A stretch of DNA of 64,000 bases, taken from IMG/VR virus record IMGVR_UViG_3300023179_004149, positions 62,001 to 126,000 of that record; one strand, written 5' to 3'. Positions within the stretch are counted from its first letter, which is position 1. Every line of letters starts with the position of its first letter. The notes below the pieces were generated by a model. It was not told where the DNA came from. It did no database searches and saw nothing but the letters and a program-made list of their open reading frames with translations. Shown here in pieces: positions 1 to 37,684 of the stretch. A program made the translations under genes and the position numbers.

Positions 1-391
1 ACTCTAACATCTCAGACCTCATCTGGTTCACAGATATGATAAAGTTTTGTACTTTCTCCAGTACTTCATTGGTTGTAAACTTAAAATAGTTTAAATCATA
101 CAGGTGATTATAATGAGTACTTGATAATCCCTTAGCGAAATTATTGTCATTCACGTCGAATAACATGTAGCTATCAACATAGCCAACATACACACGGTTA
201 AATATGTCTCTGATTTCTTTGATCTTTTTTGTGCTGGTAAAGCGTACTATTATTACAGACTGACCCATGCTAAATCTAACAAGGGAATCGGAATTAATAA
301 CAGCGGATATACCGTGCCTAAAATTCTCTGGGTATCTACCCAAAAAGAATAACATATACTCTCGCTTACGGGACTTAGTAAGTTTCATCAT
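1..391 (-). CDS. hypothetical protein, partial (runs off the left edge)
   Basis: Not in the ORF track. Manual translation from ATG at 391 (MMKLTKSRKREYMLFFLGRYPENF...) stays open to the window edge and is co-oriented with its neighbours. Confidence 0.7.
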   Translation of the reverse strand, partial: MMKLTKSRKREYMLFFLGRYPENFRHGISAVINSDSLVRFSMGQSVIIVRFTSTKKIKEIRDIFNRVYVGYVDSYMLFDVNDNNFAKGLSSTHYNHLYDLNYFKFTTNEVLEKVQNFIISVNQMRSEMLE

Positions 392-435
392 ATTTTCCCA
401 AATATGATACTTTAATTTAAAAAGTAGAAAATCCA

Positions 436-2682
436 TTATATCGTGTCTATTAATGTTGAGATGTTATTTTCCTTTTTAACAAGAATTCTGTGGTCGGCCC
501 AATCTTGAATCAATGGATTATGACTGATAATCCAAATGTGTTCAAAGAACTGTTTGAGTTTTTCAAAAAACAGACCGACTTTTTCAAGGTTCTGGTTGGA
601 TACTTTTCCAGTAACTTCATCAAACACTATGATATTAGGTTTTGGTAATGAACATACTTTACTCAACACACATCTTAGTGCTAGAGAACTTACAGTTTTT
701 TCATACCCCGATCCCGCATTAATTGGTTTTTCAACACCTGTTTCGCTATCTACCATCCAGAACTCAACCTCACCCTTTTCATTCATGCGCATCTCAAGAA
801 CAAACTCACAACTATCAGCAAGAAGTATTTTAAGATGGCTATTAATGAGTGGTATCATAGTACTTAACACCATTTTAGAAATACCATTCTTACCGTAAAT
901 ATCCAAGTAAACCTTAAAAATGTGGTCTATCATTTCTTCGTTCTTCAACTCTTTGAGTAGTGCGTTATAACCCTCTATTTTACCATTAGCGGTCAGAATA
1001 TCTCTATCTGTTCCGTTTATTTGTAAAGATACGGTTTCTTTTTCTTCGTTCAAAGAATTCAAAGAGAATTTTATTTTTTGAATATCAGTATCTATTAACT
1101 GGTTCTTCTCAACCCTACTCTTTATATCTCTATAGTTCTTTAACTTCTCATTACCACGGATTAAGCTATCCTGATACGCTTTCAACTCTAAACGGCTTTT
1201 CTCAATTAATAAATTGTTCCTGTTATATAAATCCCAGGCTACTTTTGCTTTATCAAGACCCTCTATCTTAGTATTGGCTATTTTTATAATCTCTTGTGTT
1301 GTTTCAAGAGATTCGTTTTTCTCTTTGAGTGACGTTTCGTTTTTCTCGATTTCATCACTATGATCAACGTTGTCCAGTGCCCTTTTACAAGTCTGGCAAA
1401 TCTCACTATTCTTCAACATATCGATAGTGGCTTCAATCGTATGTATTTCCAGTTTGGTTTTTATCTCTCGTTCTGTATAATCTCGAAGCTCTCCTTTGAG
1501 AGTACCGTATAAATCAATATCATACTCAATTTTAGGTTCTGGCATAGCGTCGATAAGGTTTCTGATACTCTCTTCCTTATCTTTGATAAGAGATTCGAGT
1601 TTCTGTATACCAGTGATGATGTTTTCTTCGCTCGATTTGTATAATTCGGTATCGATATCGTTATATCGAGTTTTATATAATTTTTCTGATTCATCTGTCA
1701 ATTCGGTTATTTTGGTTTTTAGTTCGTTAAGTTTTGAGTTTAAACCAACTAACATACCTTGGTATTGTTTAATATGATCTTCTTCAAGCGTAATTTTAGC
1801 CATAATTTCTTGGCTATTGTTATAGTAAAGCTTTGATTTCTCTTTCCATTCTGTATATTTTTTCTTGGCTATCTTTTCTTTCTCACGGAAAAATTCAAGA
1901 CCTATAAACCTGGTTAATATCCTACCGCGCTCAGTTGGTTTGGTTTTAATTAAATCATCCAGATTATCACCCGTTGTTAAGATCGTAATCAAGAAATCAT
2001 CATAAGTACCAACATATGTTTTGATTAATTCATCGGTATACTTTCTTTGCTCACCATTTAATTGTTTTACGCCACCACGAGGTAAAACCTGATAAAAATC
2101 AACATCACCCTTACAAGTATGGGAACCATCTTTAGCTTTTTTTCTGGTTATTGTTCTTTTGATAATGTAGTCATCACCTTCAATCTCGACCTTACCCTTT
2201 ACCTCAACCAAATCAGAATCAAGGAATCTGTTAAAGACTTCCTCATTCTTATCTGTTTTGGTTGTAGTACCAAAAAATAAGAACAATAATAAGTCAACTG
2301 TCATAGTTGTGTTATGTGAAACAATACCATTAGTGTAATATTGCGCCACCTCGTCCACCTGAATATCATATAAATCACTTTTTTCCTCTAATAACTCAAC
2401 GCTCTTAACTAAACTCACACCATTAATTGTCTGTATGGGTTCACCAACCTTAAGAGTGTTAAGATTAATAAAGTGTCCATCCTCATGTTTCACTTTATGT
2501 AAATCAGCTCCCTCAACAACCATTGCATTTTCAAGTTCGCAACGATAAACATCAGCATTTTTTTCCGTAATACCGCACCATATTATGTCTTTATAACCAT
2601 AGGGTGTGTTTACCTTAATTCCAAGATTACCATATTTTTGATATAGCTCATTTAATTTACCAATCGTTATCTCTTTAATCAT
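436..2682 (-). CDS. sbcC: Split-intein C-fragment (124 aa) fused to the C-terminal part of Rad50/SbcC (gp46-like) ATPase
   Basis: Intein blocks B (GADLH), F (LYDIQV) and G (NGIVSHN) are followed by TTMTVD, the end of Walker A. Also long coiled coil, zinc hook CQTC, signature-like GSGYEK, Walker B IIVFDE and H-loop IISH. Confidence 0.93.
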   Translation of the reverse strand: MIKEITIGKLNELYQKYGNLGIKVNTPYGYKDIIWCGITEKNADVYRCELENAMVVEGADLHKVKHEDGHFINLNTLKVGEPIQTINGVSLVKSVELLEEKSDLYDIQVDEVAQYYTNGIVSHNTTMTVDLLLFLFFGTTTKTDKNEEVFNRFLDSDLVEVKGKVEIEGDDYIIKRTITRKKAKDGSHTCKGDVDFYQVLPRGGVKQLNGEQRKYTDELIKTYVGTYDDFLITILTTGDNLDDLIKTKPTERGRILTRFIGLEFFREKEKIAKKKYTEWKEKSKLYYNNSQEIMAKITLEEDHIKQYQGMLVGLNSKLNELKTKITELTDESEKLYKTRYNDIDTELYKSSEENIITGIQKLESLIKDKEESIRNLIDAMPEPKIEYDIDLYGTLKGELRDYTEREIKTKLEIHTIEATIDMLKNSEICQTCKRALDNVDHSDEIEKNETSLKEKNESLETTQEIIKIANTKIEGLDKAKVAWDLYNRNNLLIEKSRLELKAYQDSLIRGNEKLKNYRDIKSRVEKNQLIDTDIQKIKFSLNSLNEEKETVSLQINGTDRDILTANGKIEGYNALLKELKNEEMIDHIFKVYLDIYGKNGISKMVLSTMIPLINSHLKILLADSCEFVLEMRMNEKGEVEFWMVDSETGVEKPINAGSGYEKTVSSLALRCVLSKVCSLPKPNIIVFDEVTGKVSNQNLEKVGLFFEKLKQFFEHIWIISHNPLIQDWADHRILVKKENNISTLIDTI
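2311..2682 (-). mobile_element. Split intein C-fragment (IntC, 124 aa; +1 residue Thr)
   Basis: MIKEITIGKL...YYTNGIVSHN|T: HINT-fold motifs without block A and without an endonuclease domain. Confidence 0.9.
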
Positions 2683-3688
2683 TTGTTTTTATATTTAAAA
2701 ATTGTAAACATTTTTTTATTGTTAATTCTTTATTTTTTCTATAATCAGAATCCCATATTGTCAACACCTCATAACCCTCATCAACCGCAGCCAACTTTTT
2801 AAATTCGTCTTGCTCTTGAATTTCTTTAGCTGTTAAATTTTTTCTAAAAGGATGTGGGTAATCATCTGGTTTATATTTCGAAGGGTTACCATGATAATCA
2901 TCGCCATTATACTCAATAATTTTTTTCATTTTAATATCAGCGAAATCATATAACCACAAACCACCATTTTTTTTATTTAATCTAATTTCTTTATTTTTAG
3001 TAGCGAAATAAACATGCTCTCTGTTCTTTATTTCATATTGTTCTAAAATTAAATAAAATAATTCTTGTGATATTTTAGAGTACCCTATTTTTAAATTACC
3101 GCCAGACGATAAAGATTTTTGCCAATCAATTTGTCGTTTATTAAAAATAAATTTACCTCTTTCCTCACCATGTTTTGCGACACATTTTTCAAGTGTAAAC
3201 GTTCTCTGTTGTTCGGATATTCTATCAATAGCCTCAGCCTCCGTTAAACCCCTTTTCATCCAATATTCCTTTTTTTTGGGGGAAGCATTACCTTCTTTTT
3301 GTTTTCTTTTCTGGTATTTTAATTTACCCACAATATCACCATATTTTTCAATAAACGCCCTTTCGGTATTCATTAAATGACATTCTATTTTAAATTTAGC
3401 TTCTTCTTTGGTAAAACCTTTATCTAGCCAATAATCAATATAAACTGGTTTAAATTTCTTGATTTTTAATTCCGCTTCATCTTTAGATAAACCTCGTTGA
3501 ATCCAATAATTTACCGAATAAGCCGAACCATTTGCAATAGTTATATTATTATCTTTTAATCGTTTTACTATAACTGATTCATCAACACCAAATTCTTTTG
3601 CTATTTTTTTCGTCGATTTTAATTCTTTAGTGTAATCGGTAATGATTTTTTCAACTTGTTCTGTAGTAAATTCATATTTTTTACCCAT
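2675..3688 (-). CDS. Free-standing homing endonuclease, Vsr-like/EDxHD (DUF559-like) nuclease with N-terminal HTH and repeats
   Basis: C-terminal YDF...IIEYNGDDYHGN...GYEVLTIWDSD. N-terminal HTH (STKKIAKEFGVDESVIVKRL) and three YWxxxGxxxxEA repeats. Lies between the two intein halves. Confidence 0.85.
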   Translation of the reverse strand: MGKKYEFTTEQVEKIITDYTKELKSTKKIAKEFGVDESVIVKRLKDNNITIANGSAYSVNYWIQRGLSKDEAELKIKKFKPVYIDYWLDKGFTKEEAKFKIECHLMNTERAFIEKYGDIVGKLKYQKRKQKEGNASPKKKEYWMKRGLTEAEAIDRISEQQRTFTLEKCVAKHGEERGKFIFNKRQIDWQKSLSSGGNLKIGYSKISQELFYLILEQYEIKNREHVYFATKNKEIRLNKKNGGLWLYDFADIKMKKIIEYNGDDYHGNPSKYKPDDYPHPFRKNLTAKEIQEQDEFKKLAAVDEGYEVLTIWDSDYRKNKELTIKKCLQFLNIKTND

Positions 3689-3715
3689 ATTTATAGTTTC
3701 TTTACTATAAATATG
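3686..3715 (-). promoter_or_regulatory. Hairpin sequestering the endonuclease start codon, with a TATTTATA promoter-like motif in its 5' arm
   Basis: Coding strand CATATTTATAGT-aaagaa-ACTATAAATATG is a perfect 12-bp inverted repeat ending in the ATG. Confidence 0.8.
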
Positions 3716-3749
3716 TCCAGCTAACTAAAAAGGTAAGGGTATTGAAAAA

Positions 3750-4355
3750 TTATTTTAATTCTTCGGGTATAAAACCCAACGTTTTCAATATATAATCCTC
3801 ATTATATTCAATTGTTATATTAGTATTTTCTTTAATACATTTACCGCCATAATTTGGCGGGTCGGATATTACCGACGTAATACCGTTTTTATTTTCATAT
3901 TTGAGTTTATTACCCGAACCATACGACAAGAAATTAGAGAATTCAATCTCTTTGATTTTAAATTTCTTATATCTATTAGTTTGTTCTTTGTAATTCTCTA
4001 ATTCGATATTTACTGAGTTGTCCAGTTTGATGAGATGGGCTGTGTTAATCTCAATGTTGTTATCGATCAAGTATTGTTCGATTAACTTCTTTTGGTAGTT
4101 TTCATCTAAAATAAGCTCAGAAGCGTCCGCTCCACCCTCAGCCACAAGTTCAGAGTTCTTGCTAATAATTGGCTTAAAAATAACTTTAACTTTATTGGTC
4201 TTATACCTGTTTTGAAAATATTTTTCAATTTCTTTTTCTTTTACTTGCGAATGATTATCTAACGTATCTTCCCATATAACTTTTATATAGTTGTTACTAT
4301 CATAAATATCGTCATTTTTGGGCTTAGATGTCGTATATGTCATTGTAGTTATCAT
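3750..4355 (-). CDS. sbcC: N-terminal part of Rad50/SbcC (with ~130-aa extension) fused to a split-intein N-fragment
   Basis: FKIKEIEFSNFLSYG (typical SMC/Rad50 first strand), then GITSVISDPPNYGGK (Walker A up to the Lys), then CIKENTNI... and a stop 29 aa later. Confidence 0.9.
   Translation of the reverse strand: MITTMTYTTSKPKNDDIYDSNNYIKVIWEDTLDNHSQVKEKEIEKYFQNRYKTNKVKVIFKPIISKNSELVAEGGADASELILDENYQKKLIEQYLIDNNIEINTAHLIKLDNSVNIELENYKEQTNRYKKFKIKEIEFSNFLSYGSGNKLKYENKNGITSVISDPPNYGGKCIKENTNITIEYNEDYILKTLGFIPEELK
3753..3839 (-). mobile_element. Split intein N-fragment (IntN, 29 aa, Cys1)
   Basis: CIKENTNITIEYNEDYILKTLGFIPEELK* matches block A (C-h-x-x-x-T-x-I) directly after the Walker A Lys. 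Confidence 0.88.
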
Positions 4356-4593
4356 TTTCTATTCTTTTATTGGTTACGGTAATTGTGTTGTCTTCTTGTT
4401 TAATTTCTGGTTGAGGTGTTTCTTCTTTTCCTATCGGACTTTGTTTAATCTCAATGTCTGGTTTATTACCGTACTTAAGAACCGAAAAAGCATTCCCAAT
4501 GAGATCATTTAAAAATTTATCTGGATCGCCAATATCGTTAATCTTACAATATAATTCGATCTCATCAAGTTGTTTCTTATTAAGTTTAAGCAT
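4324..4593 (-). CDS. hypothetical protein (89 aa)
   Basis: ATG at 4593 overlaps the sbcD stop (ATGCTTAA) and is preferred over the track's TTG start at 4620. Fills the gap between sbcD and sbcC-N. Confidence 0.65.
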   Translation of the reverse strand: MLKLNKKQLDEIELYCKINDIGDPDKFLNDLIGNAFSVLKYGNKPDIEIKQSPIGKEETPQPEIKQEDNTITVTNKRIENDNYNDIYDI

Positions 4594-5386
4594 TGGTAAA
4601 TATTTCGCAACCCTCTTCAATATCCGAAAAATCAGTTATTTTGAAGGTAAGGTATTTAACGGGATTATCGATATCGTAAAGTTTATAGTCGAAACCATTA
4701 TCAGTAATAGTAAGAACACCATATCCGTGTTGGGACACAGTTTCTCCGTAATTTTGTTGAATCATGCTACCAGGATAGATAACATCTATACCTGATTTGG
4801 TTTTTAATATCTGTCTTTTGTGTATATCACCGCACATTACGATATGACAATCAGCGAACTTTTCAACGTCGACACCATGAGTAAAACTATAACCCATTTC
4901 ATTAACAGCTCCAACTATTACACCATGAAACAACCCTATTTTCTTTTTACCTTTATATGAATTATGATGTAGTTGTTCGGGTGTAGCATGACTATCAAAA
5001 ATAGAATACACGACCCAGGCTACGTCATCATCTTCAATAACATCAGACTTGGTGTAATAGTGAATATTATCCAAATCCAAGGCCTTGATGATTGGTGTTA
5101 ACGCATCCATACGCTCTTTGTTCTGTTCAACAATATCGTGATTACCAGGTATTATAATTACTTTCTTAGTTACTGACGAGCATTGAGTTAAAAACCAACT
5201 GACCTCGTTTACCAACTCAGGGCTTATTTGGTTTCTTGAATGTACTATATCACCAGCGATAACAATCCTATCAGGTTGTATCTTTTTCATTTGGTCGATA
5301 AAGTTTGAACACACAGATCTGAATTCTATGTGTCTTTGGATATTCCTAAAATGAATATCTGCAATATGCGCAATTGTTTTAATCAT
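4586..5386 (-). CDS. sbcD: Mre11/SbcD-like (gp47-like) metallophosphoesterase nuclease
   Basis: Five phosphoesterase motifs: ADIH, AGDIVH, PGNHD, FHG, GDIH. Adjacent to Rad50. Confidence 0.92.
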   Translation of the reverse strand: MIKTIAHIADIHFRNIQRHIEFRSVCSNFIDQMKKIQPDRIVIAGDIVHSRNQISPELVNEVSWFLTQCSSVTKKVIIIPGNHDIVEQNKERMDALTPIIKALDLDNIHYYTKSDVIEDDDVAWVVYSIFDSHATPEQLHHNSYKGKKKIGLFHGVIVGAVNEMGYSFTHGVDVEKFADCHIVMCGDIHKRQILKTKSGIDVIYPGSMIQQNYGETVSQHGYGVLTITDNGFDYKLYDIDNPVKYLTFKITDFSDIEEGCEIFTNA

Positions 5387-5399
5387 AATATTTTTATAT

Positions 5400-5825
5400 T
5401 TAACAATGTTCTTTTCTTGAATATTTAGTCCAATGCAGCCAACCTAATGTTTTAGTAATAAAACCCCATTCACGTGTTCTTTTGAAATTAAAAAATAAAG
5501 TATGACATGGTATTTCATTACCATTTTCATCCATCGCTAATTGCAATCTATGTACCCATGTTGCTGGCCTAAAGATTATTGAGCCTGGTTTATACCAAAC
5601 ACTTTTTTGAACCCCGTTATTATCACTAATTTCATAATAACCGCCCTTAAGCACAATACTCATAAAAGCCCAAGGATGGTCGTGCAAACATTCATCATCA
5701 CTTAAAACGATATTATGATGTTTAATCGAAAATAATTCGCCAATAGTTAAAAGAGTTCTCCTTATCAAATAAGGTTTACCATCATCTCTGGTAATAACGG
5801 TTCTTTTAAAGAGCTTTTTTTTCAT
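5400..5825 (-). CDS. cupin-fold protein
   Basis: LHDHPWAFMSIVLKGGYYE and a distal WVHRL form the cupin HxH...E...H metal motif. Confidence 0.7.
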   Translation of the reverse strand: MKKKLFKRTVITRDDGKPYLIRRTLLTIGELFSIKHHNIVLSDDECLHDHPWAFMSIVLKGGYYEISDNNGVQKSVWYKPGSIIFRPATWVHRLQLAMDENGNEIPCHTLFFNFKRTREWGFITKTLGWLHWTKYSRKEHC

Positions 5826-5827
5826 TT

Positions 5828-7555
5828 TTATTTTAATAATTTTAGTTTAAAATGGTCAATCAACATTTCAGCTTCGCGCTTCATGTATGCAACTGGAATT
5901 AATTTGAAAGTCTGAGAAAACTTATCCCAATAGAATAAACCAGCCCTATTAAACTTACGTCCAGTTTCTCTTTCGTACATTACACCATATACCGACAACT
6001 GTAATGTATAATCGTTGTACTGACAATGAGTCAAATGGTTTACTGGGAAATGTAAATATTCACCATAGGCATTCTCGTATTCAAATTTTTTATTTGTATT
6101 ATGTGTTTTAATATAATTTCTCGTCGCTAAATAAGTGTGATTTTTGCTTTCAACGGCCAAACATTTTGTTGGTACGGTATCTATTTTTTCTATTTTTTTA
6201 ACATATCTAAATTTCGATTTTTCTGTATCAGGTAAACAAATATCATTATAATTTTCCGTTTTACATAAAAAAGGATTCACACCGCCATGAGGTTTAAAAC
6301 AAACGTGAAGCGTCTTTATCTTTTTGTTATTACATGTTGTAAAAGCTTTTATTATTGTTGGTTTAAACCCTAACGAAGATATTAGTGTAGACATACCATC
6401 AGCTTGCCATTGTTGGGTTGTTATCATAACGCACCTGTCCCTTGTTTTATTATAATACCCGTCAGTATCCATAAACCCACGTAATAAATCTAACCTTTGT
6501 TGTTTGGATGCTCGTAAATATATATCAGGTATGTGTTTATTTTTTAATAACCCTAATTTATTTAACTTACCTCGTAAACCATAAATTGTTCTCGATTCGG
6601 CTAAACCACTTGAGCTGCCTGAAACATCTGAGCCTGTATCATACCCCCTATTTTTAAGTTCCTCCCAAATCATTTCGTTCATATTTGTCAAAACCCCACA
6701 GTCTTTTGAACCATCACCCAACCAAACCCCAAATACATAAGGGTCTATCGGTAACTCCAAATTTTTTTCCGTAATGACTTCGGTTGTTTCTATGCGTATG
6801 GGTTGTTTTTGTTTAAACATACCATATAAATCCTCTGTTGTTTTTATTACATTAGAATATTTATATTTTGATAATCTATTAGATATTTCCCATTTATGTT
6901 CGTGATCACAAATTATAGTATCATTTGTATCAAATGTTATTTTATAACATGGGTTATGGTGTATTTCCGATACATGTAATACTTTTGTTAAATTTCCTTC
7001 ACCATCAAAAATAACATCACCCACATTAATATCCGACATTAATTTAAAACCATCTTCTGTCGGTATTTCGGTATCAAGAGATAAACCTTTAAAATCCCAC
7101 ACATTAAATTTATCATAATCTAAGTCTTCGATAATATCGGATGTACCAGCAATACCAAGCTTATCATTAAACTCGTAAGACATGATATATTCTGGTTTTA
7201 AACGATCCGAATTAATCAAACTTAGTTTCTCGTCTGAACACACCTTTTTAAAAGCATTTAAAACCGTTTTTTCGTACTCATCCCTGGGAGAGTATATTCT
7301 ATGCGGCGCAAGTAAAAAGCGCTCTAAAATAGCGTGTAAATTAGTTCCGTATTCATTTGCAAGACGGTTGATTTCTCGCCATTCAGCAATCACCTCTTCT
7401 TTTGTTATTCCTTTTCTGTCCGCCACCCTCTGAGCGTGATAGTCTTCATCAAACTTTTCTTTGTACTTACCCAACATCGTGGTTACCGAAGTGTATTGCA
7501 TGTTTGGAAACTTGTCATTCACATAGGTGTGGGTTTCATGAATTAATTTTATCAT
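5828..7555 (-). CDS. PD-(D/E)xK (RecB/Cas4-like) exonuclease containing an intein
   Basis: Extein motifs SVTT, GTNLH, AGTSD, WDFK|TN and YTLQLSVY. Spliced length 245 aa. Confidence 0.88.
   Translation of the reverse strand: MIKLIHETHTYVNDKFPNMQYTSVTTMLGKYKEKFDEDYHAQRVADRKGITKEEVIAEWREINRLANEYGTNLHAILERFLLAPHRIYSPRDEYEKTVLNAFKKVCSDEKLSLINSDRLKPEYIMSYEFNDKLGIAGTSDIIEDLDYDKFNVWDFKGLSLDTEIPTEDGFKLMSDINVGDVIFDGEGNLTKVLHVSEIHHNPCYKITFDTNDTIICDHEHKWEISNRLSKYKYSNVIKTTEDLYGMFKQKQPIRIETTEVITEKNLELPIDPYVFGVWLGDGSKDCGVLTNMNEMIWEELKNRGYDTGSDVSGSSSGLAESRTIYGLRGKLNKLGLLKNKHIPDIYLRASKQQRLDLLRGFMDTDGYYNKTRDRCVMITTQQWQADGMSTLISSLGFKPTIIKAFTTCNNKKIKTLHVCFKPHGGVNPFLCKTENYNDICLPDTEKSKFRYVKKIEKIDTVPTKCLAVESKNHTYLATRNYIKTHNTNKKFEYENAYGEYLHFPVNHLTHCQYNDYTLQLSVYGVMYERETGRKFNRAGLFYWDKFSQTFKLIPVAYMKREAEMLIDHFKLKLLK
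6098..7087 (-). mobile_element. Class 3 (WCT) intein starting with Gly, with LAGLIDADG endonuclease, 330 aa
   Basis: Starts GLSLDTEIPT. Block B CDHEHKW, block F PTKCLAV, block G IKTHN|T. LAGLIDADG motifs FGVWLGDG and LRGFMDTDG. Confidence 0.9.
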
Positions 7556-7558
7556 AGC

Positions 7559-8530
7559 TTAATCTACTATTCGTGTTGTTTTATTTTTTAACCAATCTTT
7601 TAAATTATCTTGGCCATAAGTTTGGTTGAAGCTAGAAACATCATGTTCTTCTGGCATCCTATTTATCAGGATTCGATTCATTAGTTTACCGCAATCAAGT
7701 TTATTATATATTTTGACAGCATCATCATTGGCATCGGAATCCAAAACAATAATGATAAAGCTATTGGCTTTGCGGTATATCAAATCCAACAACTTATCAT
7801 ACATTTTCTTACCCAGTAACGGTATGCTGTTTGGTATAACTATATGATCAAAAGCACCCTCAACCAAGAATATGGGTTTATCCCAGTTAATCATATTTTC
7901 ATTGAAAATGATACTGGTTTTATCCACCTCTGGGTTTAAATATTTATATTTCGTATTCTGTTTGCTGATGGATCGTGCAACAAAATAATTGAGATCCCCG
8001 TCGATGTCATAAGAAGGTATGACAATCCTATTTTGATATTTACCATCGAGGCAAAACCCGAGTTTATATTTAGCAATTATCTCATCGGTAATGCCTCTAC
8101 TATATAGATAATTAAAAGCTGAAACAAATAAAATGTGCCCTTGTTTACCAGTTAGGTAATAAAAAGATTCAGGTAATTTTAAAACCCGTTTATCAATCTC
8201 AAACCCCTCATCCTCATAAAAGTCACTATCGAATACGAAATGAGCGTTGATGAATTTCCTTAAAGTTTCTTTATCAGCATATTGCTTGAAAAGGTAATAT
8301 AGTTTACCTTTGGTACCATCTGTTTCAGCGCAAGCCCAACAGTTATATACGCCTAATTCATAATTTATTTCAAGATTACCTTTACCATCGTGATCAAGAC
8401 CCTTCTCATAAGAGCAGTTAGGACAGTCAAAACTGATCTGTCCTCTACTCTCATAGTGTTTTCTAGGTTCCCCAAGAAAATCCTCCAATAAACTTATAAG
8501 TTCTTCGTGCCTATCGTCAGAAACGAACAT
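7559..8530 (-). CDS. dnaG: DNA primase (zinc-binding + TOPRIM)
   Basis: CPNC...CWAC zinc finger, YLYSRGI, RIVIP, KYKYLNP, VEGAFD, LDSDA. Confidence 0.88.
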   Translation of the reverse strand: MFVSDDRHEELISLLEDFLGEPRKHYESRGQISFDCPNCSYEKGLDHDGKGNLEINYELGVYNCWACAETDGTKGKLYYLFKQYADKETLRKFINAHFVFDSDFYEDEGFEIDKRVLKLPESFYYLTGKQGHILFVSAFNYLYSRGITDEIIAKYKLGFCLDGKYQNRIVIPSYDIDGDLNYFVARSISKQNTKYKYLNPEVDKTSIIFNENMINWDKPIFLVEGAFDHIVIPNSIPLLGKKMYDKLLDLIYRKANSFIIIVLDSDANDDAVKIYNKLDCGKLMNRILINRMPEEHDVSSFNQTYGQDNLKDWLKNKTTRIVD

Positions 8531-34735: not shown

Positions 34736-37684
34736 TTATTTAACCTCACATCCAGACGCTCCGCAGGCTAACTCACCTGTAAGGTCCGTATTATCATCGA
34801 ATTCAATTACCTTTGATAAATCTATATTGGTTAATGATTTCATCATCCCATCATACTGTTCCTTTGTACAGTCGGAAAACGGTGCCTGAATGTAACTACC
34901 ACCATCATAAGGTAATACTGATAAACCATTGTAAAACTCTTTATTTTCCCACATCCATAAACCAACAAGATCCCATTCGTTTTCTTTAATGTTAATTGTT
35001 GCCGATACGTTATGTGTGTTTTCACCTTTTCTGTGACCAGTTCTGATCCATTCCTTACTTACCTTTTTAACCCTTTCCAAAGTAGAAATAGCTGATTCGG
35101 TTCTTAAGATTGAATCTTTTGGTGCCATCTGTGGTACGCTGATTACAGCCGTATCGTGTGGGCGGAAGTACTCGTCTTCAACCAATTCTGGATGGTATGT
35201 TGCCAAGTAATAATAAATCGCTTCATTCTTACCAACACGGATTCTACGTATATAGTAATCGTTGTGCCAAGCGTGGATACCAGATGATGTACCAAGAACC
35301 AATGAAGATGTGCCCGATGGTTTAACTGTTGTTGATCTCGCAGCTGCATTTATACCTATTAAAGCAGCAACACGTGCGTTTTCTTCTTTTACGATATTAG
35401 CGGCTTCAACCATATCATATTCAAGTACAACACCTGAACCAATACCAGTCATGCCAACACCTATTAGGGCCTCTTTTTCGGTTGTTCTCTTCCATATCTC
35501 ACGTAAGTAATGGAAGTCAGTATAACCAGCCTGTAATGTACCTATAAACGCAGCGGCTTTAACTCTTTCGTTGTAATCCTCTTGTGAAACAATATCTGAA
35601 ACATTTACCTCAGTCAAATTACAAAATTGATTTGGTCTTAACGAAATTTCACAATTATGAGCTGAGACACCATTTAAATCAAATTCATGTACATCATCGA
35701 CAGTTACATCATAAACATCCTCAACAGCATCAACTTCAATCGATATAATTTCATCATAAAATCGTGTTCTATTGTATTTCCTCTTATATCCAGATAAAAT
35801 AGTTTTTAATTTATTTTTTTTAATTGGTTCATCAAAACCAATAATTTGATTATATATTTGAATATTATCGTTACTAATAATTAATTCAAATAACTCTTTA
35901 CAGAAATAATCGGATTTAGAACCTTTACCGTTTGGTAGTGATTTAAATTTTTCATTACTCCTTTTAAAAATTGAAGATACTATACCAAACCTAATTAATA
36001 TTCTTTGTACCCTTTTCAAAAGATTTTCATCAGCTTGTGTGAGTCTAATAGAATAACCTTTTATAAAATTACCCTGAACAGACCCGTCAGCATCAAATAA
36101 CCCTCTTAATAAACCCTGTAAAAAAACGTAAGAGGCGCTTTCTATTTTATCCGTTATTTTCTTATTACCATAAATAACATCGAACTTATTGGCTAACTTA
36201 CTAATGCCAACACATTTGATTCTTTTTTTATCATAATTGGTTATGTCTTGAATTTGTAGATCTGACCTGTGATCAACATTATCGATAATTCTTTTATAAG
36301 CTATTTCAGACATAACATCTTTAGTTTCACCCCAAAAATCAAGTGAACTATCGTTGATTGTCATAGCACCATCACCTATTAACGAACCTAAAATCCAACC
36401 CTCATCAAAACTACCATTGCCAGACCACTTATGTATATCTCTATGGTTTGAAAGTGATATTTTATCACCTATTTTCAAATCTTTTAATTCTTTCCATTCA
36501 TTAAGTAATAATTTTCTTGTTAATTTAGAAATATATTTTAACTTATGATCATTAGTTATTCTAAATTGGTATCCCTTTTTAGTAGTGACTTTATATAATT
36601 GTTTCGTTCCCGTTTTCCAAAAACCGTTCGATAACGTATTATACATTTTACCATTACTAACACAATTAAAATTAGTATTTACCAAATCAGTTACTAATTT
36701 AGCCCCAGTATCTGTCATAACCCACGAATCACCAGCCACACAGCATGGATTGGTTCCGAGACTCTTATCATTTGTAAAAAAAATACCTGGCTCACCTGAA
36801 CCTGATAATTCAATTCGTTTCCATAAATCATCAAAAAAATCTTTTGTTATACGGTGTCTTAATAAGACAGCCGAATTGTTAGCGCGACCTCTCTGTGGAT
36901 TAGATTCCCACCATTCGCCAGACTTACATGAGATCATCTCATCATCATCAGCGGAGAATAAACAAATTAACGCGGCCCTACGAATACCACCAGCTAAAAC
37001 AGCGTCGGCAATATAACAAACCATATCATGCACTTCTATCGAAGTTAATCTGTCACCATCATTTTTACTATCTAAAATCTTTTTTACGTTATGGATACAG
37101 TCTTTTAATGGTTGAGGGCCTGGTGCCTTACCACCAGATGTTATTAATCTAGCTCCCTTTGGTCGTATATCAGAATAATCAAATTGTGGTGTTGATGTTA
37201 TATCGCCAGTATACGATTTAAATAATACCTTAATTGCATCAGCCCAACCTTCAATAGAATCATTTATTAAAAACCTTCTGTTTCTATCCGCTTTTGGTTT
37301 ACGTATATCGGGTAATTTCTCAATATCATGTTTCTGTACTGAATAACCAACACCAGTACCACCCAATAATAAAAACATTATCTCAGCAAATGTATCGATA
37401 TGGTCTATTGGGGTGTAAGCACAATTAAATATCCTATTAGGTGATATTTCGATTGGTTTGCCGCCGAATTGAAGTGATCTCATGGAAGGTAGTACCTTCT
37501 TGTTATAAACCATCTGGTAGTTTTTTATTATCTCGTCTTTCAACATTGGATACTTTTTAATGTGCATATCCATGTTCCTGGTTACTAATTCATTCCAGGT
37601 CTCTCTTCGTTTCTCATCTGGAAGATACTTGGCGTACTTCATGTACACCGTAATTTCGCTTAAAATCTCTTGTGATAAATCCAT
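34736..37684 (-). CDS. nrdJ: Class II (B12-dependent) ribonucleotide reductase with intein
   Basis: PSMRSL, FNCAY, GGIRRAALI, GTNPC|CEISL (spliced), TVKPSGT and C-terminal ACGASGC. Spliced length 619 aa. Confidence 0.95.
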   Translation of the reverse strand: MDLSQEILSEITVYMKYAKYLPDEKRRETWNELVTRNMDMHIKKYPMLKDEIIKNYQMVYNKKVLPSMRSLQFGGKPIEISPNRIFNCAYTPIDHIDTFAEIMFLLLGGTGVGYSVQKHDIEKLPDIRKPKADRNRRFLINDSIEGWADAIKVLFKSYTGDITSTPQFDYSDIRPKGARLITSGGKAPGPQPLKDCIHNVKKILDSKNDGDRLTSIEVHDMVCYIADAVLAGGIRRAALICLFSADDDEMISCKSGEWWESNPQRGRANNSAVLLRHRITKDFFDDLWKRIELSGSGEPGIFFTNDKSLGTNPCCVAGDSWVMTDTGAKLVTDLVNTNFNCVSNGKMYNTLSNGFWKTGTKQLYKVTTKKGYQFRITNDHKLKYISKLTRKLLLNEWKELKDLKIGDKISLSNHRDIHKWSGNGSFDEGWILGSLIGDGAMTINDSSLDFWGETKDVMSEIAYKRIIDNVDHRSDLQIQDITNYDKKRIKCVGISKLANKFDVIYGNKKITDKIESASYVFLQGLLRGLFDADGSVQGNFIKGYSIRLTQADENLLKRVQRILIRFGIVSSIFKRSNEKFKSLPNGKGSKSDYFCKELFELIISNDNIQIYNQIIGFDEPIKKNKLKTILSGYKRKYNRTRFYDEIISIEVDAVEDVYDVTVDDVHEFDLNGVSAHNCEISLRPNQFCNLTEVNVSDIVSQEDYNERVKAAAFIGTLQAGYTDFHYLREIWKRTTEKEALIGVGMTGIGSGVVLEYDMVEAANIVKEENARVAALIGINAAARSTTVKPSGTSSLVLGTSSGIHAWHNDYYIRRIRVGKNEAIYYYLATYHPELVEDEYFRPHDTAVISVPQMAPKDSILRTESAISTLERVKKVSKEWIRTGHRKGENTHNVSATINIKENEWDLVGLWMWENKEFYNGLSVLPYDGGSYIQAPFSDCTKEQYDGMMKSLTNIDLSKVIEFDDNTDLTGELACGASGCEVK
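35654..36742 (-). mobile_element. Canonical intein with LAGLIDADG endonuclease in NrdJ, 363 aa
   Basis: CVAGDSWV...ITNDH...LGSLIGDG...LRGLFDADG...VYDVTV...SAHN|C. Confidence 0.95.

What the first reader, a model, noticed from the sequence alone, without database searches (positions are those of the whole stretch)
2675..3688. Vsr/EDxHD-like homing endonuclease sits exactly in the intein break and overlaps the IntC start
Seen: the gene occupies the gap between IntN and IntC, and its last 8 nt overlap the IntC ATG. It has an HTH, three YW-x3-G-x4-EA repeats, two K(Y/H)G-x3-GK repeats and an EYNGDDYH nuclease domain. Inference: the endonuclease invaded a mini-intein just after block A, creating the unusual split, and the IntN-endonuclease-IntC cassette homes into intein-free Rad50 alleles. 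The repeats may be a modular DNA-binding array. The overlap suggests Rad50-C translation is coupled to the endonuclease.
Basis: partly seen in the sequence, partly recalled or inferred. Interest (0 to 1): 0.7.

Follow-up and report, generated by a model that had tools for sequence, protein, structure and literature searches.

The report
Homing endonuclease splitting a phage Rad50 intein
A freshwater jumbo phage carries its Rad50/SbcC repair-ATPase gene in two pieces, broken inside an intein by a free-standing Vsr-like homing endonuclease gene; this "fractured gene" layout has been known since 2009, but here in a new host gene and with clear signs that the whole cassette still moves between phages.

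Summary
ORF 3688..2675 (337 aa) lies between a 29-aa IntN and a 124-aa IntC. Together these interrupt a Rad50/SbcC-like gene at the Walker A motif (GGK|T). The ORF's stop overlaps the IntC ATG by 8 nt.

The protein has an N-terminal HTH, a helical region with the reported repeats, and a C-terminal Vsr fold. That fold matches Vsr (1cw0, Z 10.6) and I-Bth0305I (3r3p, Z 9.8). The catalytic set is invariant in 53 homologues.

IntC is most like the atypically split inteins VidaL and CatC. A complex model pairs IntN with IntC (0.82 against 0.21 for the best control).

Relatives show all three states at the same site: empty, contiguous mini-intein, and split with the endonuclease.

Against a second occupied phage, the cassette is 95-98% identical in DNA (dS 0.07-0.17). 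The flanking Rad50 is 86-88% identical (dS about 0.9), and the change is sharp at both splice junctions. This points to recent horizontal transfer of IntN-endonuclease-IntC as one unit.

The layout matches the "fractured genes" of Dassa et al. 2009. It is therefore a new member of a known kind, with Rad50 as a new host gene. Cleavage, splicing and translational coupling remain untested.

The parts
4586..5386 (-). SbcD/Mre11-like nuclease gene, the partner of the Rad50-like gene (context).
   Evidence: Pfam Metallophos E 5.5e-10. PHROG 100, SbcD-like, E 1.9e-26.
3840..4355 (-). Rad50/SbcC-like N-extein, 172 aa, ending in the first half of Walker A (...NYGGK). Relatives suggest the true start may be the second Met, 4 codons in.
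   Evidence: It is collinear with uninterrupted 788-797 aa Rad50/SbcC homologues.
3750..3839 (-). IntN, 29 aa plus stop: CIKENTNITIEYNED (block A, two strands) plus the tail YILKTLGFIPEELK. The tail is conserved in split cassettes and absent from the contiguous intein P0260.
   Evidence: A complex model places residues 170-200 of this ORF against IntC.
3689..3749 (-). 61-nt spacer between the IntN stop and the endonuclease ATG. It holds a 12-bp hairpin (3715..3686) that includes the ATG, and the sequence TATAAATA (3695..3688).
   Evidence: MFE -15.3 kcal/mol, z -2.7, 3 of 200 shuffles fold as well. Hairpins of a similar kind occur in L030, L024, L022 and L019. Dassa 2009 reports the same feature.
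2675..3688 (-). Free-standing Vsr-like (EDxHD-type) homing endonuclease gene, 337 aa.
   Evidence: PHROG 22677 E 4.9e-30.
3542..3676 (-). Endonuclease aa 5-49: three-helix HTH domain.
   Evidence: VIA-align matches to the GcrA DNA-binding domain (Z 7.7) and to Tc3, sigma-4 and ParB HTHs (Z 6-6.8). Weak Pfam HTH_50 hit.
3101..3514 (-). Endonuclease aa 59-196: helical repeat region with three YW-x3-G-x4-EA hairpins and two K[YH]G-x3-GK units. It is the presumed DNA-recognition array.
   Evidence: No Pfam family matches even at E 10. The Atlas lead to DUF7487/NUMOD3 clusters is only a lead.
2687..3091 (-). Endonuclease aa 200-334: Vsr-fold nuclease domain with D248, D251, E259, D263, H266 and D294 invariant, and D313 nearly so.
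   Evidence: 1cw0 Z 10.6, 3hrl Z 10.0, 3r3p Z 9.8. Invariant columns. Weak DUF559/MTES_1575 hits.
2675..2682 (-). 8-nt overlap ATGATTAA between the endonuclease stop and the IntC start.
2311..2682 (-). IntC, 124 aa. It holds helix alpha-1, the block B His (ADLH), block F (DLYDIQVDEVAQYYTNG) and block G (IVSHN).
   Evidence: phmmer hits to VidaL 6vgv (E 8e-6) and CatC 6dsl (E 8.3e-5). Weak Pfam Intein_splicing hit. 358 homologues found.
436..2310 (-). Rad50/SbcC-like C-extein, 624 aa, starting at Thr+1 (TTMTVDLL...). It contains a CxxC hook-like motif (CQTCKR) and the Walker B region.
   Evidence: PHROG 77, SbcC-like, E 2.9e-39. Pfam SbcC_Walker_B, weak. Homologues named 'DNA repair exonuclease SbcCD ATPase subunit'.

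Best explanation
This is a 'fractured gene'. A 1,529-bp mobile cassette (window 3839..2311, minus strand) sits in the Walker A codons (GGK|T) of the phage's Rad50/SbcC-like gene.

The cassette is an atypically split mini-intein, broken after its first two strands. The break holds a free-standing Vsr-like (EDxHD-type) homing endonuclease gene with its own start and a 5' hairpin.

Inferred mechanism:
- The two Rad50 pieces are made separately.
- The 29-aa IntN and 124-aa IntC associate and trans-splice (Cys1, Thr+1). This restores GGKTT and yields a roughly 796-aa Rad50 that works with the neighbouring SbcD/Mre11.
- When an occupied phage and an empty phage infect the same cell, the endonuclease binds through its HTH and helical repeats. 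It cuts the uninterrupted allele at or near GGTAAA|ACAAC.
- Recombinational repair then copies the whole IntN-endonuclease-IntC unit into the break.

Shown: the anatomy, the fold, all three allelic states, and the population-genetic signature of transfer of the whole unit. Inferred: cleavage specificity, splicing activity and regulation.
For: Anatomy and junctions.

Host gene: SbcC-like PHROG 77 (E 2.9e-39) with an SbcD neighbour.

Nuclease:
- AlphaFold model with pLDDT 88.
- Vsr and I-Bth0305I are the top structural matches, at Z 9.8-10.6.
- The catalytic residues are invariant across 53 homologues.
- 29% identity (E 9e-16) to the 'putative VSR endonuclease' that splits the PolB intein of Aeromonas phage Aes123.

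Intein:
- The best PDB sequence matches are the atypically split VidaL and CatC.
- The IntN/IntC complex scores 0.82 against 0.21 for the best of 3 controls. That mark was reached by 51 of 78 solved complexes and 2 of 108 mismatched pairs. Runs agree in at least 68% of contacts, and partner pLDDT is at least 56.

Allelic states:
- Empty site in L002-L017 and L031, up to 96% aa identity.
- Same cassette in L019, L020, L022-L025 and L030.
- Contiguous intein in P0260, P0248, P0271 and P0255.

Mobility, window against L030:
- DNA identity is IntN 97.8%, spacer 95.1%, endonuclease 97.6% and IntC 96.5%. The N-extein is 86.8%, the C-extein 86-88% and SbcD 80.6%.
- dS is 0.07, 0.09 and 0.17 for the cassette parts, against 0.90-0.92 for the exteins.
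- Identity changes within about 10-20 nt of each splice junction.
- The empty L031 (92.7% nt) is closer to the window than the occupied L030 (88%).
- Contigs from two other lake metagenomes show the same contrast.

Selection: dN/dS is 0.11 for the endonuclease and 0.04 for the exteins.

The architecture, hairpin plus TATAAATA, and 3' overlap match Dassa et al. 2009.
Against: - No cleavage or splicing experiment exists.
- Sequence searches alone do not link the protein to Vsr or I-Bth0305I. phmmer and a profile against the PDB gave nothing, and Pfam DUF559/MTES_1575 hits are below cutoff.
- Block B has Ala where Thr is usual (ADLH).
- The complex score could partly reflect memory of solved split inteins.
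- No empty-allele joint was seen in the source sample. Only assembled contigs were available, and these drop rare variants.
- The low cassette divergence could in principle come from gene conversion between two already occupied alleles rather than invasion of an empty one.
Confidence: 0.85

Rival explanations
1. The endonuclease homes on its own into resident contiguous mini-inteins. On this view its target is intein DNA at the split point, not the empty Rad50 allele. The intein halves would be vertically inherited passengers.
For: - Contiguous mini-inteins at the same site exist and could serve as targets.
- Endonucleases of this lineage are 42-48% identical between the Rad50 and ClpB cassettes, while the inteins are only 27-37% identical. 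So the endonuclease has changed intein partner at least once.
Against: - In window against L030, the high-identity tract runs through all of IntN and all 372 nt of IntC. It stops at the extein junctions, not near the endonuclease ORF ends.
- The nearest relatives are empty, not contiguous-intein alleles: 116 of the 120 best Rad50 hits are uninterrupted.
Confidence: 0.1
2. The cassette is a fixed, vertically inherited relic. On this view the endonuclease is inactive or domesticated, for example as a DNA-binding regulator, and the split Rad50 simply persists.
For: - The arrangement is widespread and old. Endonuclease homologues down to 44% identity sit in the same place.
- HTH and helical repeats could serve a regulatory role.
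Against: - The catalytic residues are invariant in 53 homologues.
- dN/dS is 0.11 over the whole ORF.
- Presence of the cassette disagrees with host relatedness, and cassette dS is about 10 times lower than extein dS.
Confidence: 0.04
3. The Rad50 gene is simply broken by an insertion. On this view it is a pseudogene in two pieces and no functional protein is restored.
For: No splicing data exist. The block B Thr is replaced by Ala.
Against: - Both exteins are under strong purifying selection in occupied genomes, with dN/dS 0.04.
- Cys1, the block B His, the block F Asp, the penultimate His, the terminal Asn and Thr+1 are all present.
- IntC is conserved at 49-75% across cassettes.
- IntN and IntC are predicted to pair.
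- SbcC/SbcD are practically universal in jumbo phages (PMC7824862).
Confidence: 0.02

Closest known systems
'Fractured genes' of Dassa, London, Stoddard, Schueler-Furman & Pietrokovski 2009 (NAR 37:2560; PMC2677866)
   Same: [quoted passage not shown]
- The endonuclease is of the Vsr-like family.
- There is a hairpin with TATAAATA upstream of the endonuclease start.
- The endonuclease 3' end overlaps the downstream intein-half ORF (6-69 bp in 15 of their loci).
- One of their loci (Terminase) has the same unusual split, leaving a 122-aa IntC that lacks only motif N1.
   Different: - The host gene differs. Rad50/SbcC is not among their eight enzyme types; they saw only an SbcD-like gene split without an intein.
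- This locus also comes with empty, contiguous and split alleles, and with a measured divergence contrast that shows recent movement of the whole unit.
I-Bth0305I, prototype of the EDxHD homing endonucleases (Taylor et al. 2011; PDB 3R3P; PMC3239194)
   Same: - Vsr-fold C-terminal catalytic domain (Z 9.8; 95 of 97 residues aligned).
- N-terminal DNA-binding region with repeated helical motifs around an HTH.
- The same catalytic positions are conserved.
   Different: - I-Bth0305I is encoded in a group I intron of recA, not in an intein gap.
- No significant sequence match was found.
- The N-terminal repeats here (YW-x3-G-x4-EA) match no Pfam NUMOD model.
- The spacing from the catalytic His to the last Asp follows Vsr (28 residues), not I-Bth0305I (9 residues).
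Atypically split inteins (GOS/AceL TerL, VidaL, CatC, PolB16 OarG)
   Same: - Short IntN and long IntC.
- IntC is detectably homologous to VidaL and CatC.
- The split falls after strand beta-2 and before helix alpha-1, as described for VidaL and PolB16.
   Different: - IntN carries an extra conserved 14-aa tail (..GF[LI]PxELK).
- The host is Rad50.
- The +1 residue is Thr.
- Activity has not been measured.
Aeromonas phage Aes123 PolB1 split intein with 'putative VSR endonuclease' (JN377899)
   Same: A cultured T4-like phage has a replication gene split by intein halves that flank a homologous Vsr-like endonuclease (29% identity over aa 106-329). The ORFs overlap on both sides.
   Different: The split is canonical (long IntN), the host gene is PolB, and the intein is cysteine-less.

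Membership tests
Fractured gene (split intein plus free-standing homing endonuclease; Dassa 2009) | One conserved gene is present as two adjacent same-strand ORFs that are collinear with uninterrupted homologues. | tested here: met
   The N-extein (172 aa) and C-extein (624 aa) align end to end with 788-797 aa homologues. The junction is exactly GGK|T.
Fractured gene (split intein plus free-standing homing endonuclease; Dassa 2009) | Intein halves lie at the broken ends, with the catalytic splice residues present. | tested here: met
   Cys1, block B His, block F Asp, HN and Thr+1 are present. IntC is homologous to solved inteins. IntN/IntC pairing scores 0.82 against 0.21 for the best control.
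Fractured gene (split intein plus free-standing homing endonuclease; Dassa 2009) | A separate endonuclease ORF with its own start and stop lies between the halves. | tested here: met
   ORF 3688..2675 starts 61 nt after the IntN stop and overlaps the IntC start by 8 nt.
Fractured gene (split intein plus free-standing homing endonuclease; Dassa 2009) | Protein trans-splicing restores the host protein. | not testable with these tools
   Only inferred, from purifying selection on the exteins (dN/dS 0.04) and from the intact splice residues.
EDxHD / Vsr-like homing endonucleases | Vsr-type nuclease fold. | tested here: met
   1cw0 Z 10.6, 3hrl Z 10.0, 3r3p Z 9.8 and 1vsr Z 9.6 are the top matches for aa 182-334.
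EDxHD / Vsr-like homing endonucleases | Conserved catalytic Asp, Glu, His and Asp at the Vsr D51, F62, H69 and D97 positions. | tested here: met
   D248, E259, H266 and D294 are invariant in 53 homologues. They sit at a constant offset of +197 from the Vsr residues named. The mapping is by spacing plus structural superposition, not a residue-level alignment printout.
EDxHD / Vsr-like homing endonucleases | Significant sequence similarity to family members. | tested here: inconclusive
   No hit to 3R3P or Vsr by phmmer or profile. Pfam DUF559/MTES_1575 hits are below cutoff. There are clear hits (E 2e-16 to 9e-16) to Aeromonas phage proteins annotated as VSR endonucleases.
EDxHD / Vsr-like homing endonucleases | Site-specific double-strand cleavage of the uninterrupted target allele. 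| not testable with these tools
   Indirect only: the distribution of empty and occupied alleles and the low cassette dS.
Atypically split inteins | IntN of about 15-37 aa, with IntC carrying the rest of the HINT fold. | tested here: met
   IntN is 29 aa and IntC 124 aa. The size range is taken from PMC13014065.
NUMOD DNA-binding modules | A match to the NUMOD1-4 profiles. | tested here: not met
   No NUMOD hit at E up to 10 for aa 52-198 or for the whole protein. Only low-scoring Atlas leads were found.

The most novel reading that the evidence does not exclude
The endonuclease lineage may be a retargetable reader of P-loop codons. The same nuclease core (42-48% identity) sits in atypically split inteins at the identical GK|T position of two unrelated ATPase genes, Rad50 and ClpB NBD2. 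The inteins themselves are only 27-37% identical. The endonucleases differ mainly in their N-terminal module and in the number of YW-x3-G-x4-EA repeats (3 against 5-6). If each repeat reads a few base pairs, this would be a natural modular DNA-recognition array. It would also give a route by which a free-standing endonuclease hops between inteins and creates new atypically split inteins.
Probability: 0.25. Interest if true: 0.6.

Novelty: new member of a known kind. Interest (0 to 1): 0.38.

Why it matters
- It adds Rad50/SbcC (and, in relatives, ClpB) to the genes known to be fractured by a split intein plus a Vsr-like endonuclease.
- It gives unusually clean natural evidence that IntN-endonuclease-IntC moves as one unit between diverged phages.
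- All three evolutionary states (empty, contiguous, split) occur at one site. This is the series the 2009 gene-breaking model predicted for the origin of split inteins.
- In practice, it offers a new naturally occurring atypically split intein family with many diverged members. IntN has a 15-aa core, Cys1 and Thr+1. Such inteins are sought for protein semisynthesis.
- It also offers an endonuclease family whose target can be guessed exactly.

Tried and rejected
- megablast of window 1-8000 against GenBank phages gave no match.
- A viral-contig scan with the endonuclease found no confirmed locus. The context came instead from the protein search and contig look-ups.
- phmmer and a 53-sequence profile against PDB sequences found no nuclease.
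- Foldseek on the whole multi-domain model gave only weak E-values, with no match at E <= 0.001 and helical mitoribosome proteins on top. The VIA-align second look resolved the domains.
- Pfam on the repeat region alone gave nothing at E 10. The Atlas DUF7487/NUMOD3 leads score below 0.9 and are not relied on.
- Laying contigs of four lake metagenomes found no joint that skips the cassette. Contigs cannot show rare alleles, so this is not evidence of absence.
- Rejected: that the 8-nt overlap is special. Such overlaps are common in this genome, and L019 has no overlap.
- Rejected: that TATAAATA is a T4-type late promoter here. The phage encodes sigma-70-like factors, and the motif is not conserved in all cassettes. 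It is left as an observation.
- Not done: a labelled tree of Rad50 with cassette states, and a residue-level alignment to I-Bth0305I, whose sequence was not fetched.
Full report
**Where it is**

The window is part of a 320,934-bp IMG/VR virus record judged 100% complete. It is a jumbo phage with 32.6% GC. The source appears to be a lake-water metagenome. Everything in the finding lies on the minus strand.

**Observation**

Three consecutive ORFs are involved.
- ORF 4355..3750 (201 aa) ends ...SDPPNYGGK|CIKENTNITIEYNEDYILKTLGFIPEELK*.
- A 61-nt spacer follows, then ORF 3688..2675 (337 aa).
- ORF 2682..436 (748 aa) begins MIKEITIGKLNELYQKYG... and reads ...YYTNGIVSHN|TTMTVDLLLFLFFG... at residues 124/125.

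The endonuclease stop and the next ATG share ATGATTAA, an 8-nt overlap.

The reported motifs are all present: YW-x3-G-x4-EA at aa 61, 86 and 142; K[YH]G-x3-GK at aa 115 and 172; EYNGDDYH at aa 259-266.

**Host gene**

- The C-terminal piece matches the SbcC-like PHROG 77 (E 2.9e-39) from residue 125 onward.
- The gene immediately upstream (5386..4586) is an SbcD/Mre11-type phosphoesterase.
- Homologues are named 'DNA repair exonuclease SbcCD ATPase subunit' by their sources.
- Joining the exteins gives NYGGK-TTMTVDLL, a Walker A motif. The break therefore lies between the Lys and the Thr of GK[ST].

**The intein**

- IntN is 29 aa and IntC is 124 aa.
- By sequence, IntC is most similar to the solved atypically split inteins VidaL (6vgv, E 8e-6) and CatC (6dsl, E 8.3e-5).
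- Cys1, a block B His (ADLH), the block F Asp, the penultimate His, the terminal Asn and Thr+1 are present.
- A complex prediction of the N piece (residues 133-201) with the first 160 residues of the C piece scored 0.82. The best of three controls scored 0.21.
- That mark was reached by 51 of 78 solved complexes and by 2 of 108 mismatched pairs. The runs agree in at least 68% of contacts, and the partner's pLDDT is at least 56.
- The interface covers residues 170-200 of the N piece. On IntC it covers residues 1-25, 56-63, 102-107 and 115-125.
- This supports pairing but does not show it, and it could partly reflect likeness to solved split inteins.

**The endonuclease**

- An AlphaFold model built on 53 homologues has mean pLDDT 88.
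- Whole-model Foldseek was weak. The VIA-align second look gave three domains.
- Residues 182-334 match E. coli Vsr (1cw0, Z 10.6), the DUF559 protein NGO0050 (3hrl, Z 10.0), the I-Bth0305I catalytic domain (3r3p, Z 9.8, 95 of 97 residues) and 1vsr (Z 9.6).
- Residues 5-49 match HTH domains: GcrA Z 7.7, and Tc3, sigma-4 and ParB around Z 6.
- Residues 59-196 are paired helices that carry the repeats.
- D248, D251, E259, D263, H266 and D294 are invariant, and D313 nearly so.
- The roles of Vsr D51, F62 (a Glu in the homing family), H69 and D97 come from the literature. The window's D248, E259, H266 and D294 sit at a constant +197 offset from them, and N261 corresponds to Vsr H64 and I-Bth0305I N208.
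- Direct sequence searches do not reach Vsr or I-Bth0305I. Pfam DUF559 and MTES_1575 appear only below cutoff.
- tblastn finds proteins of Aeromonas T4-like phages annotated as VSR endonucleases (E 2e-16 to 9e-16). In Aes123 that gene lies between the two intein-bearing halves of PolB.

**Relatives: three allelic states**

*Empty*
- A scan with the C-extein found 16 viral contigs where N- and C-extein codons are contiguous (L002-L017).
- Of the 120 best protein hits, 116 are uninterrupted proteins. Almost all of these are 785-799 aa, and two shorter ones are 617-621 aa. They include proteins 96% identical in the C-extein, P0122 and P0123.
- L031, which encodes P0122, aligns with the window at 92.7% DNA identity on both sides of a clean 1,529-bp gap, 3839..2311.

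*Split with endonuclease*
- L019, L020/21, L022/23, L024/25 and L030 carry the same N-piece | endonuclease | C-piece arrangement. Their endonucleases are 44-98% identical to the window's.

*Contiguous*
- An exhaustive search with IntC found P0260, a 931-aa Rad50 with a 135-aa mini-intein at the same GGK| site.
- In P0260, CVTKETKIKIKINDD runs straight into IKEITIGELN. That is precisely where the window's intein is interrupted.
- P0248 and P0271 are Mre11-Rad50 fusion proteins with a contiguous intein that still has the IntN tail GF[LV]PxELK. They look like products of endonuclease loss.

**Evidence that the unit moves**

Window compared with L030, both occupied:

| Segment | DNA identity | dS |
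|---|---|---|
| IntN | 97.8% | 0.07 |
| Spacer | 95.1% | – |
| Endonuclease | 97.6% | 0.09 |
| IntC | 96.5% | 0.17 |
| N-extein | 86.8% | 0.92 |
| C-extein | 86-88% | 0.90 |
| SbcD | 80.6% | 1.38 |

- Mismatch density changes within about 10-20 nt of each splice junction.
- The empty L031 is closer to the window than the occupied L030. Presence of the cassette therefore does not follow host relatedness.
- Contigs from two other freshwater metagenomes (X3, X4) show the same pattern. Pieces over the cassette have 1-3.5% mismatches, while extein pieces have 9-11%.
- The endonuclease has dN/dS 0.11 and the exteins 0.04.
- Together these are the expected traces of recent homing of the whole IntN-endonuclease-IntC cassette into an intein-free site, with very short co-conversion tracts. 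They argue against an inert relic, and against an endonuclease that moves only within a resident intein.

**Regulatory features**

- The spacer folds into a 12-bp hairpin that includes the endonuclease ATG. The MFE is -15.3 kcal/mol, z is -2.7, and 3 of 200 shuffles fold as well.
- The hairpin's 3' arm reads TATAAATA.
- Comparable hairpins with different sequences occur in L024, L022 and L019. L020 is weaker.
- Dassa et al. describe the same feature in 15 of 16 loci, and 3' overlaps of 6-69 bp in 15 loci.
- The overlap here is 8 nt. It is 4-11 nt in four relatives, but L019 has a 12-nt gap.
- Short overlaps are common in this genome. Translational coupling is therefore possible but not indicated by the overlap alone.
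- Strict coupling would also tie Rad50-C output to an endonuclease that such hairpins are thought to repress. This last point is inference.

**Paralogous cassettes**

- Longer homologues (406-519 aa) lie in a ClpB-like AAA+ gene of related jumbo phages.
- There the upstream piece ends G[ST]G[VT]GK|C followed by a short IntN of about 32-34 aa. The downstream piece begins with a long IntC ending SHN|TE.., which is again GK|T of a Walker A.
- These endonucleases are 42-48% identical to the window's over the C-terminal 280-330 residues. They have another N-terminus and 5-6 YW repeats. The inteins are only 27-37% identical.
- The endonuclease lineage has therefore changed intein partner at least once, or the inteins diverged much faster. 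This is the basis of the 'novel case'.

**Comparison with what is known**

- The architecture is that of the 'fractured genes' of Dassa et al. 2009. The endonuclease family was later named EDxHD after I-Bth0305I.
- The split type is that of atypically split inteins.
- Rad50/SbcC is not among the published fractured hosts in the papers read. A full-text search for intein with Rad50/SbcC and phage found nothing relevant. The library is incomplete, so prior description elsewhere cannot be excluded.

**Verdict**

This is a real feature that was correctly read. It is a new member of a known kind. The added value is the three-state series at one site and the divergence contrast.

Noticed in passing
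window 6102-7087 (minus strand), inside ORF 5828..7555: A second intein of about 329 aa with a LAGLIDADG domain (S...HN|T) interrupts a PD-(D/E)xK exonuclease-like gene two genes upstream of Rad50. It is absent from the close relatives L031, L002 and L030. L030 instead has a free-standing 281-aa LAGLIDADG ORF between the exonuclease and SbcD, only about 22% identical to the intein's endonuclease part.
   Followed up: partly
window 35654-36658 (minus strand), in ORF 34736..37684; also G000:C1:175819-177873, 183851-184882 and 209319-210266: The genome is intein-rich. The Pfam Intein_splicing model hits at least four further genes, including two hits within one 793-aa frame. One of those is 33% identical to the Rad50 IntC. 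The host proteins were not identified.
   Followed up: no
L026:2148-6669, L027:1885-6565, L028:2128-6492: Related jumbo phages have a ClpB-like AAA+ gene fractured at the NBD2 Walker A (GK|T). The insert is another atypically split intein plus a 406-519 aa paralogue of this endonuclease with 5-6 YW repeats.
   Followed up: partly
proteins P0248 (1017 aa) and P0271 (1211 aa): These are Mre11/SbcD-Rad50 fusion proteins with a contiguous version of this intein at the same P-loop site. They keep the IntN tail GF[LV]PxELK and look like scars of endonuclease loss.
   Followed up: partly
window 3753-3794 (minus strand); the same position in L019, L020, L022, L024 and L030: The 14-aa IntN tail (..[IL][IV]KK[LI]GF[LI]P[EDN]ELK) is conserved at protein level in all split cassettes, even where the endonucleases are only 44-47% identical. 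It is absent from the contiguous mini-intein P0260. Its role is unknown; it may aid IntN-IntC association or be constraint from the mobile element's 5' end.
   Followed up: no
window 3705-3713 (minus strand) and the equivalent spacers of L019, L020, L022 and L024: A TATATTTAT-like motif about 20-30 nt upstream of the endonuclease ATG (farther, about 35 nt, in L019) recurs in cassettes whose spacers are otherwise diverged. It may be a promoter element or just one arm of the hairpin.
   Followed up: no
L023:7347-8126 and L031:889-1575: Relatives carry free-standing ORFs with weak NUMOD3 hits near the Rad50 region that the window lacks at the same places. These are further endonuclease-like insertions that vary between related phages.
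   Followed up: no
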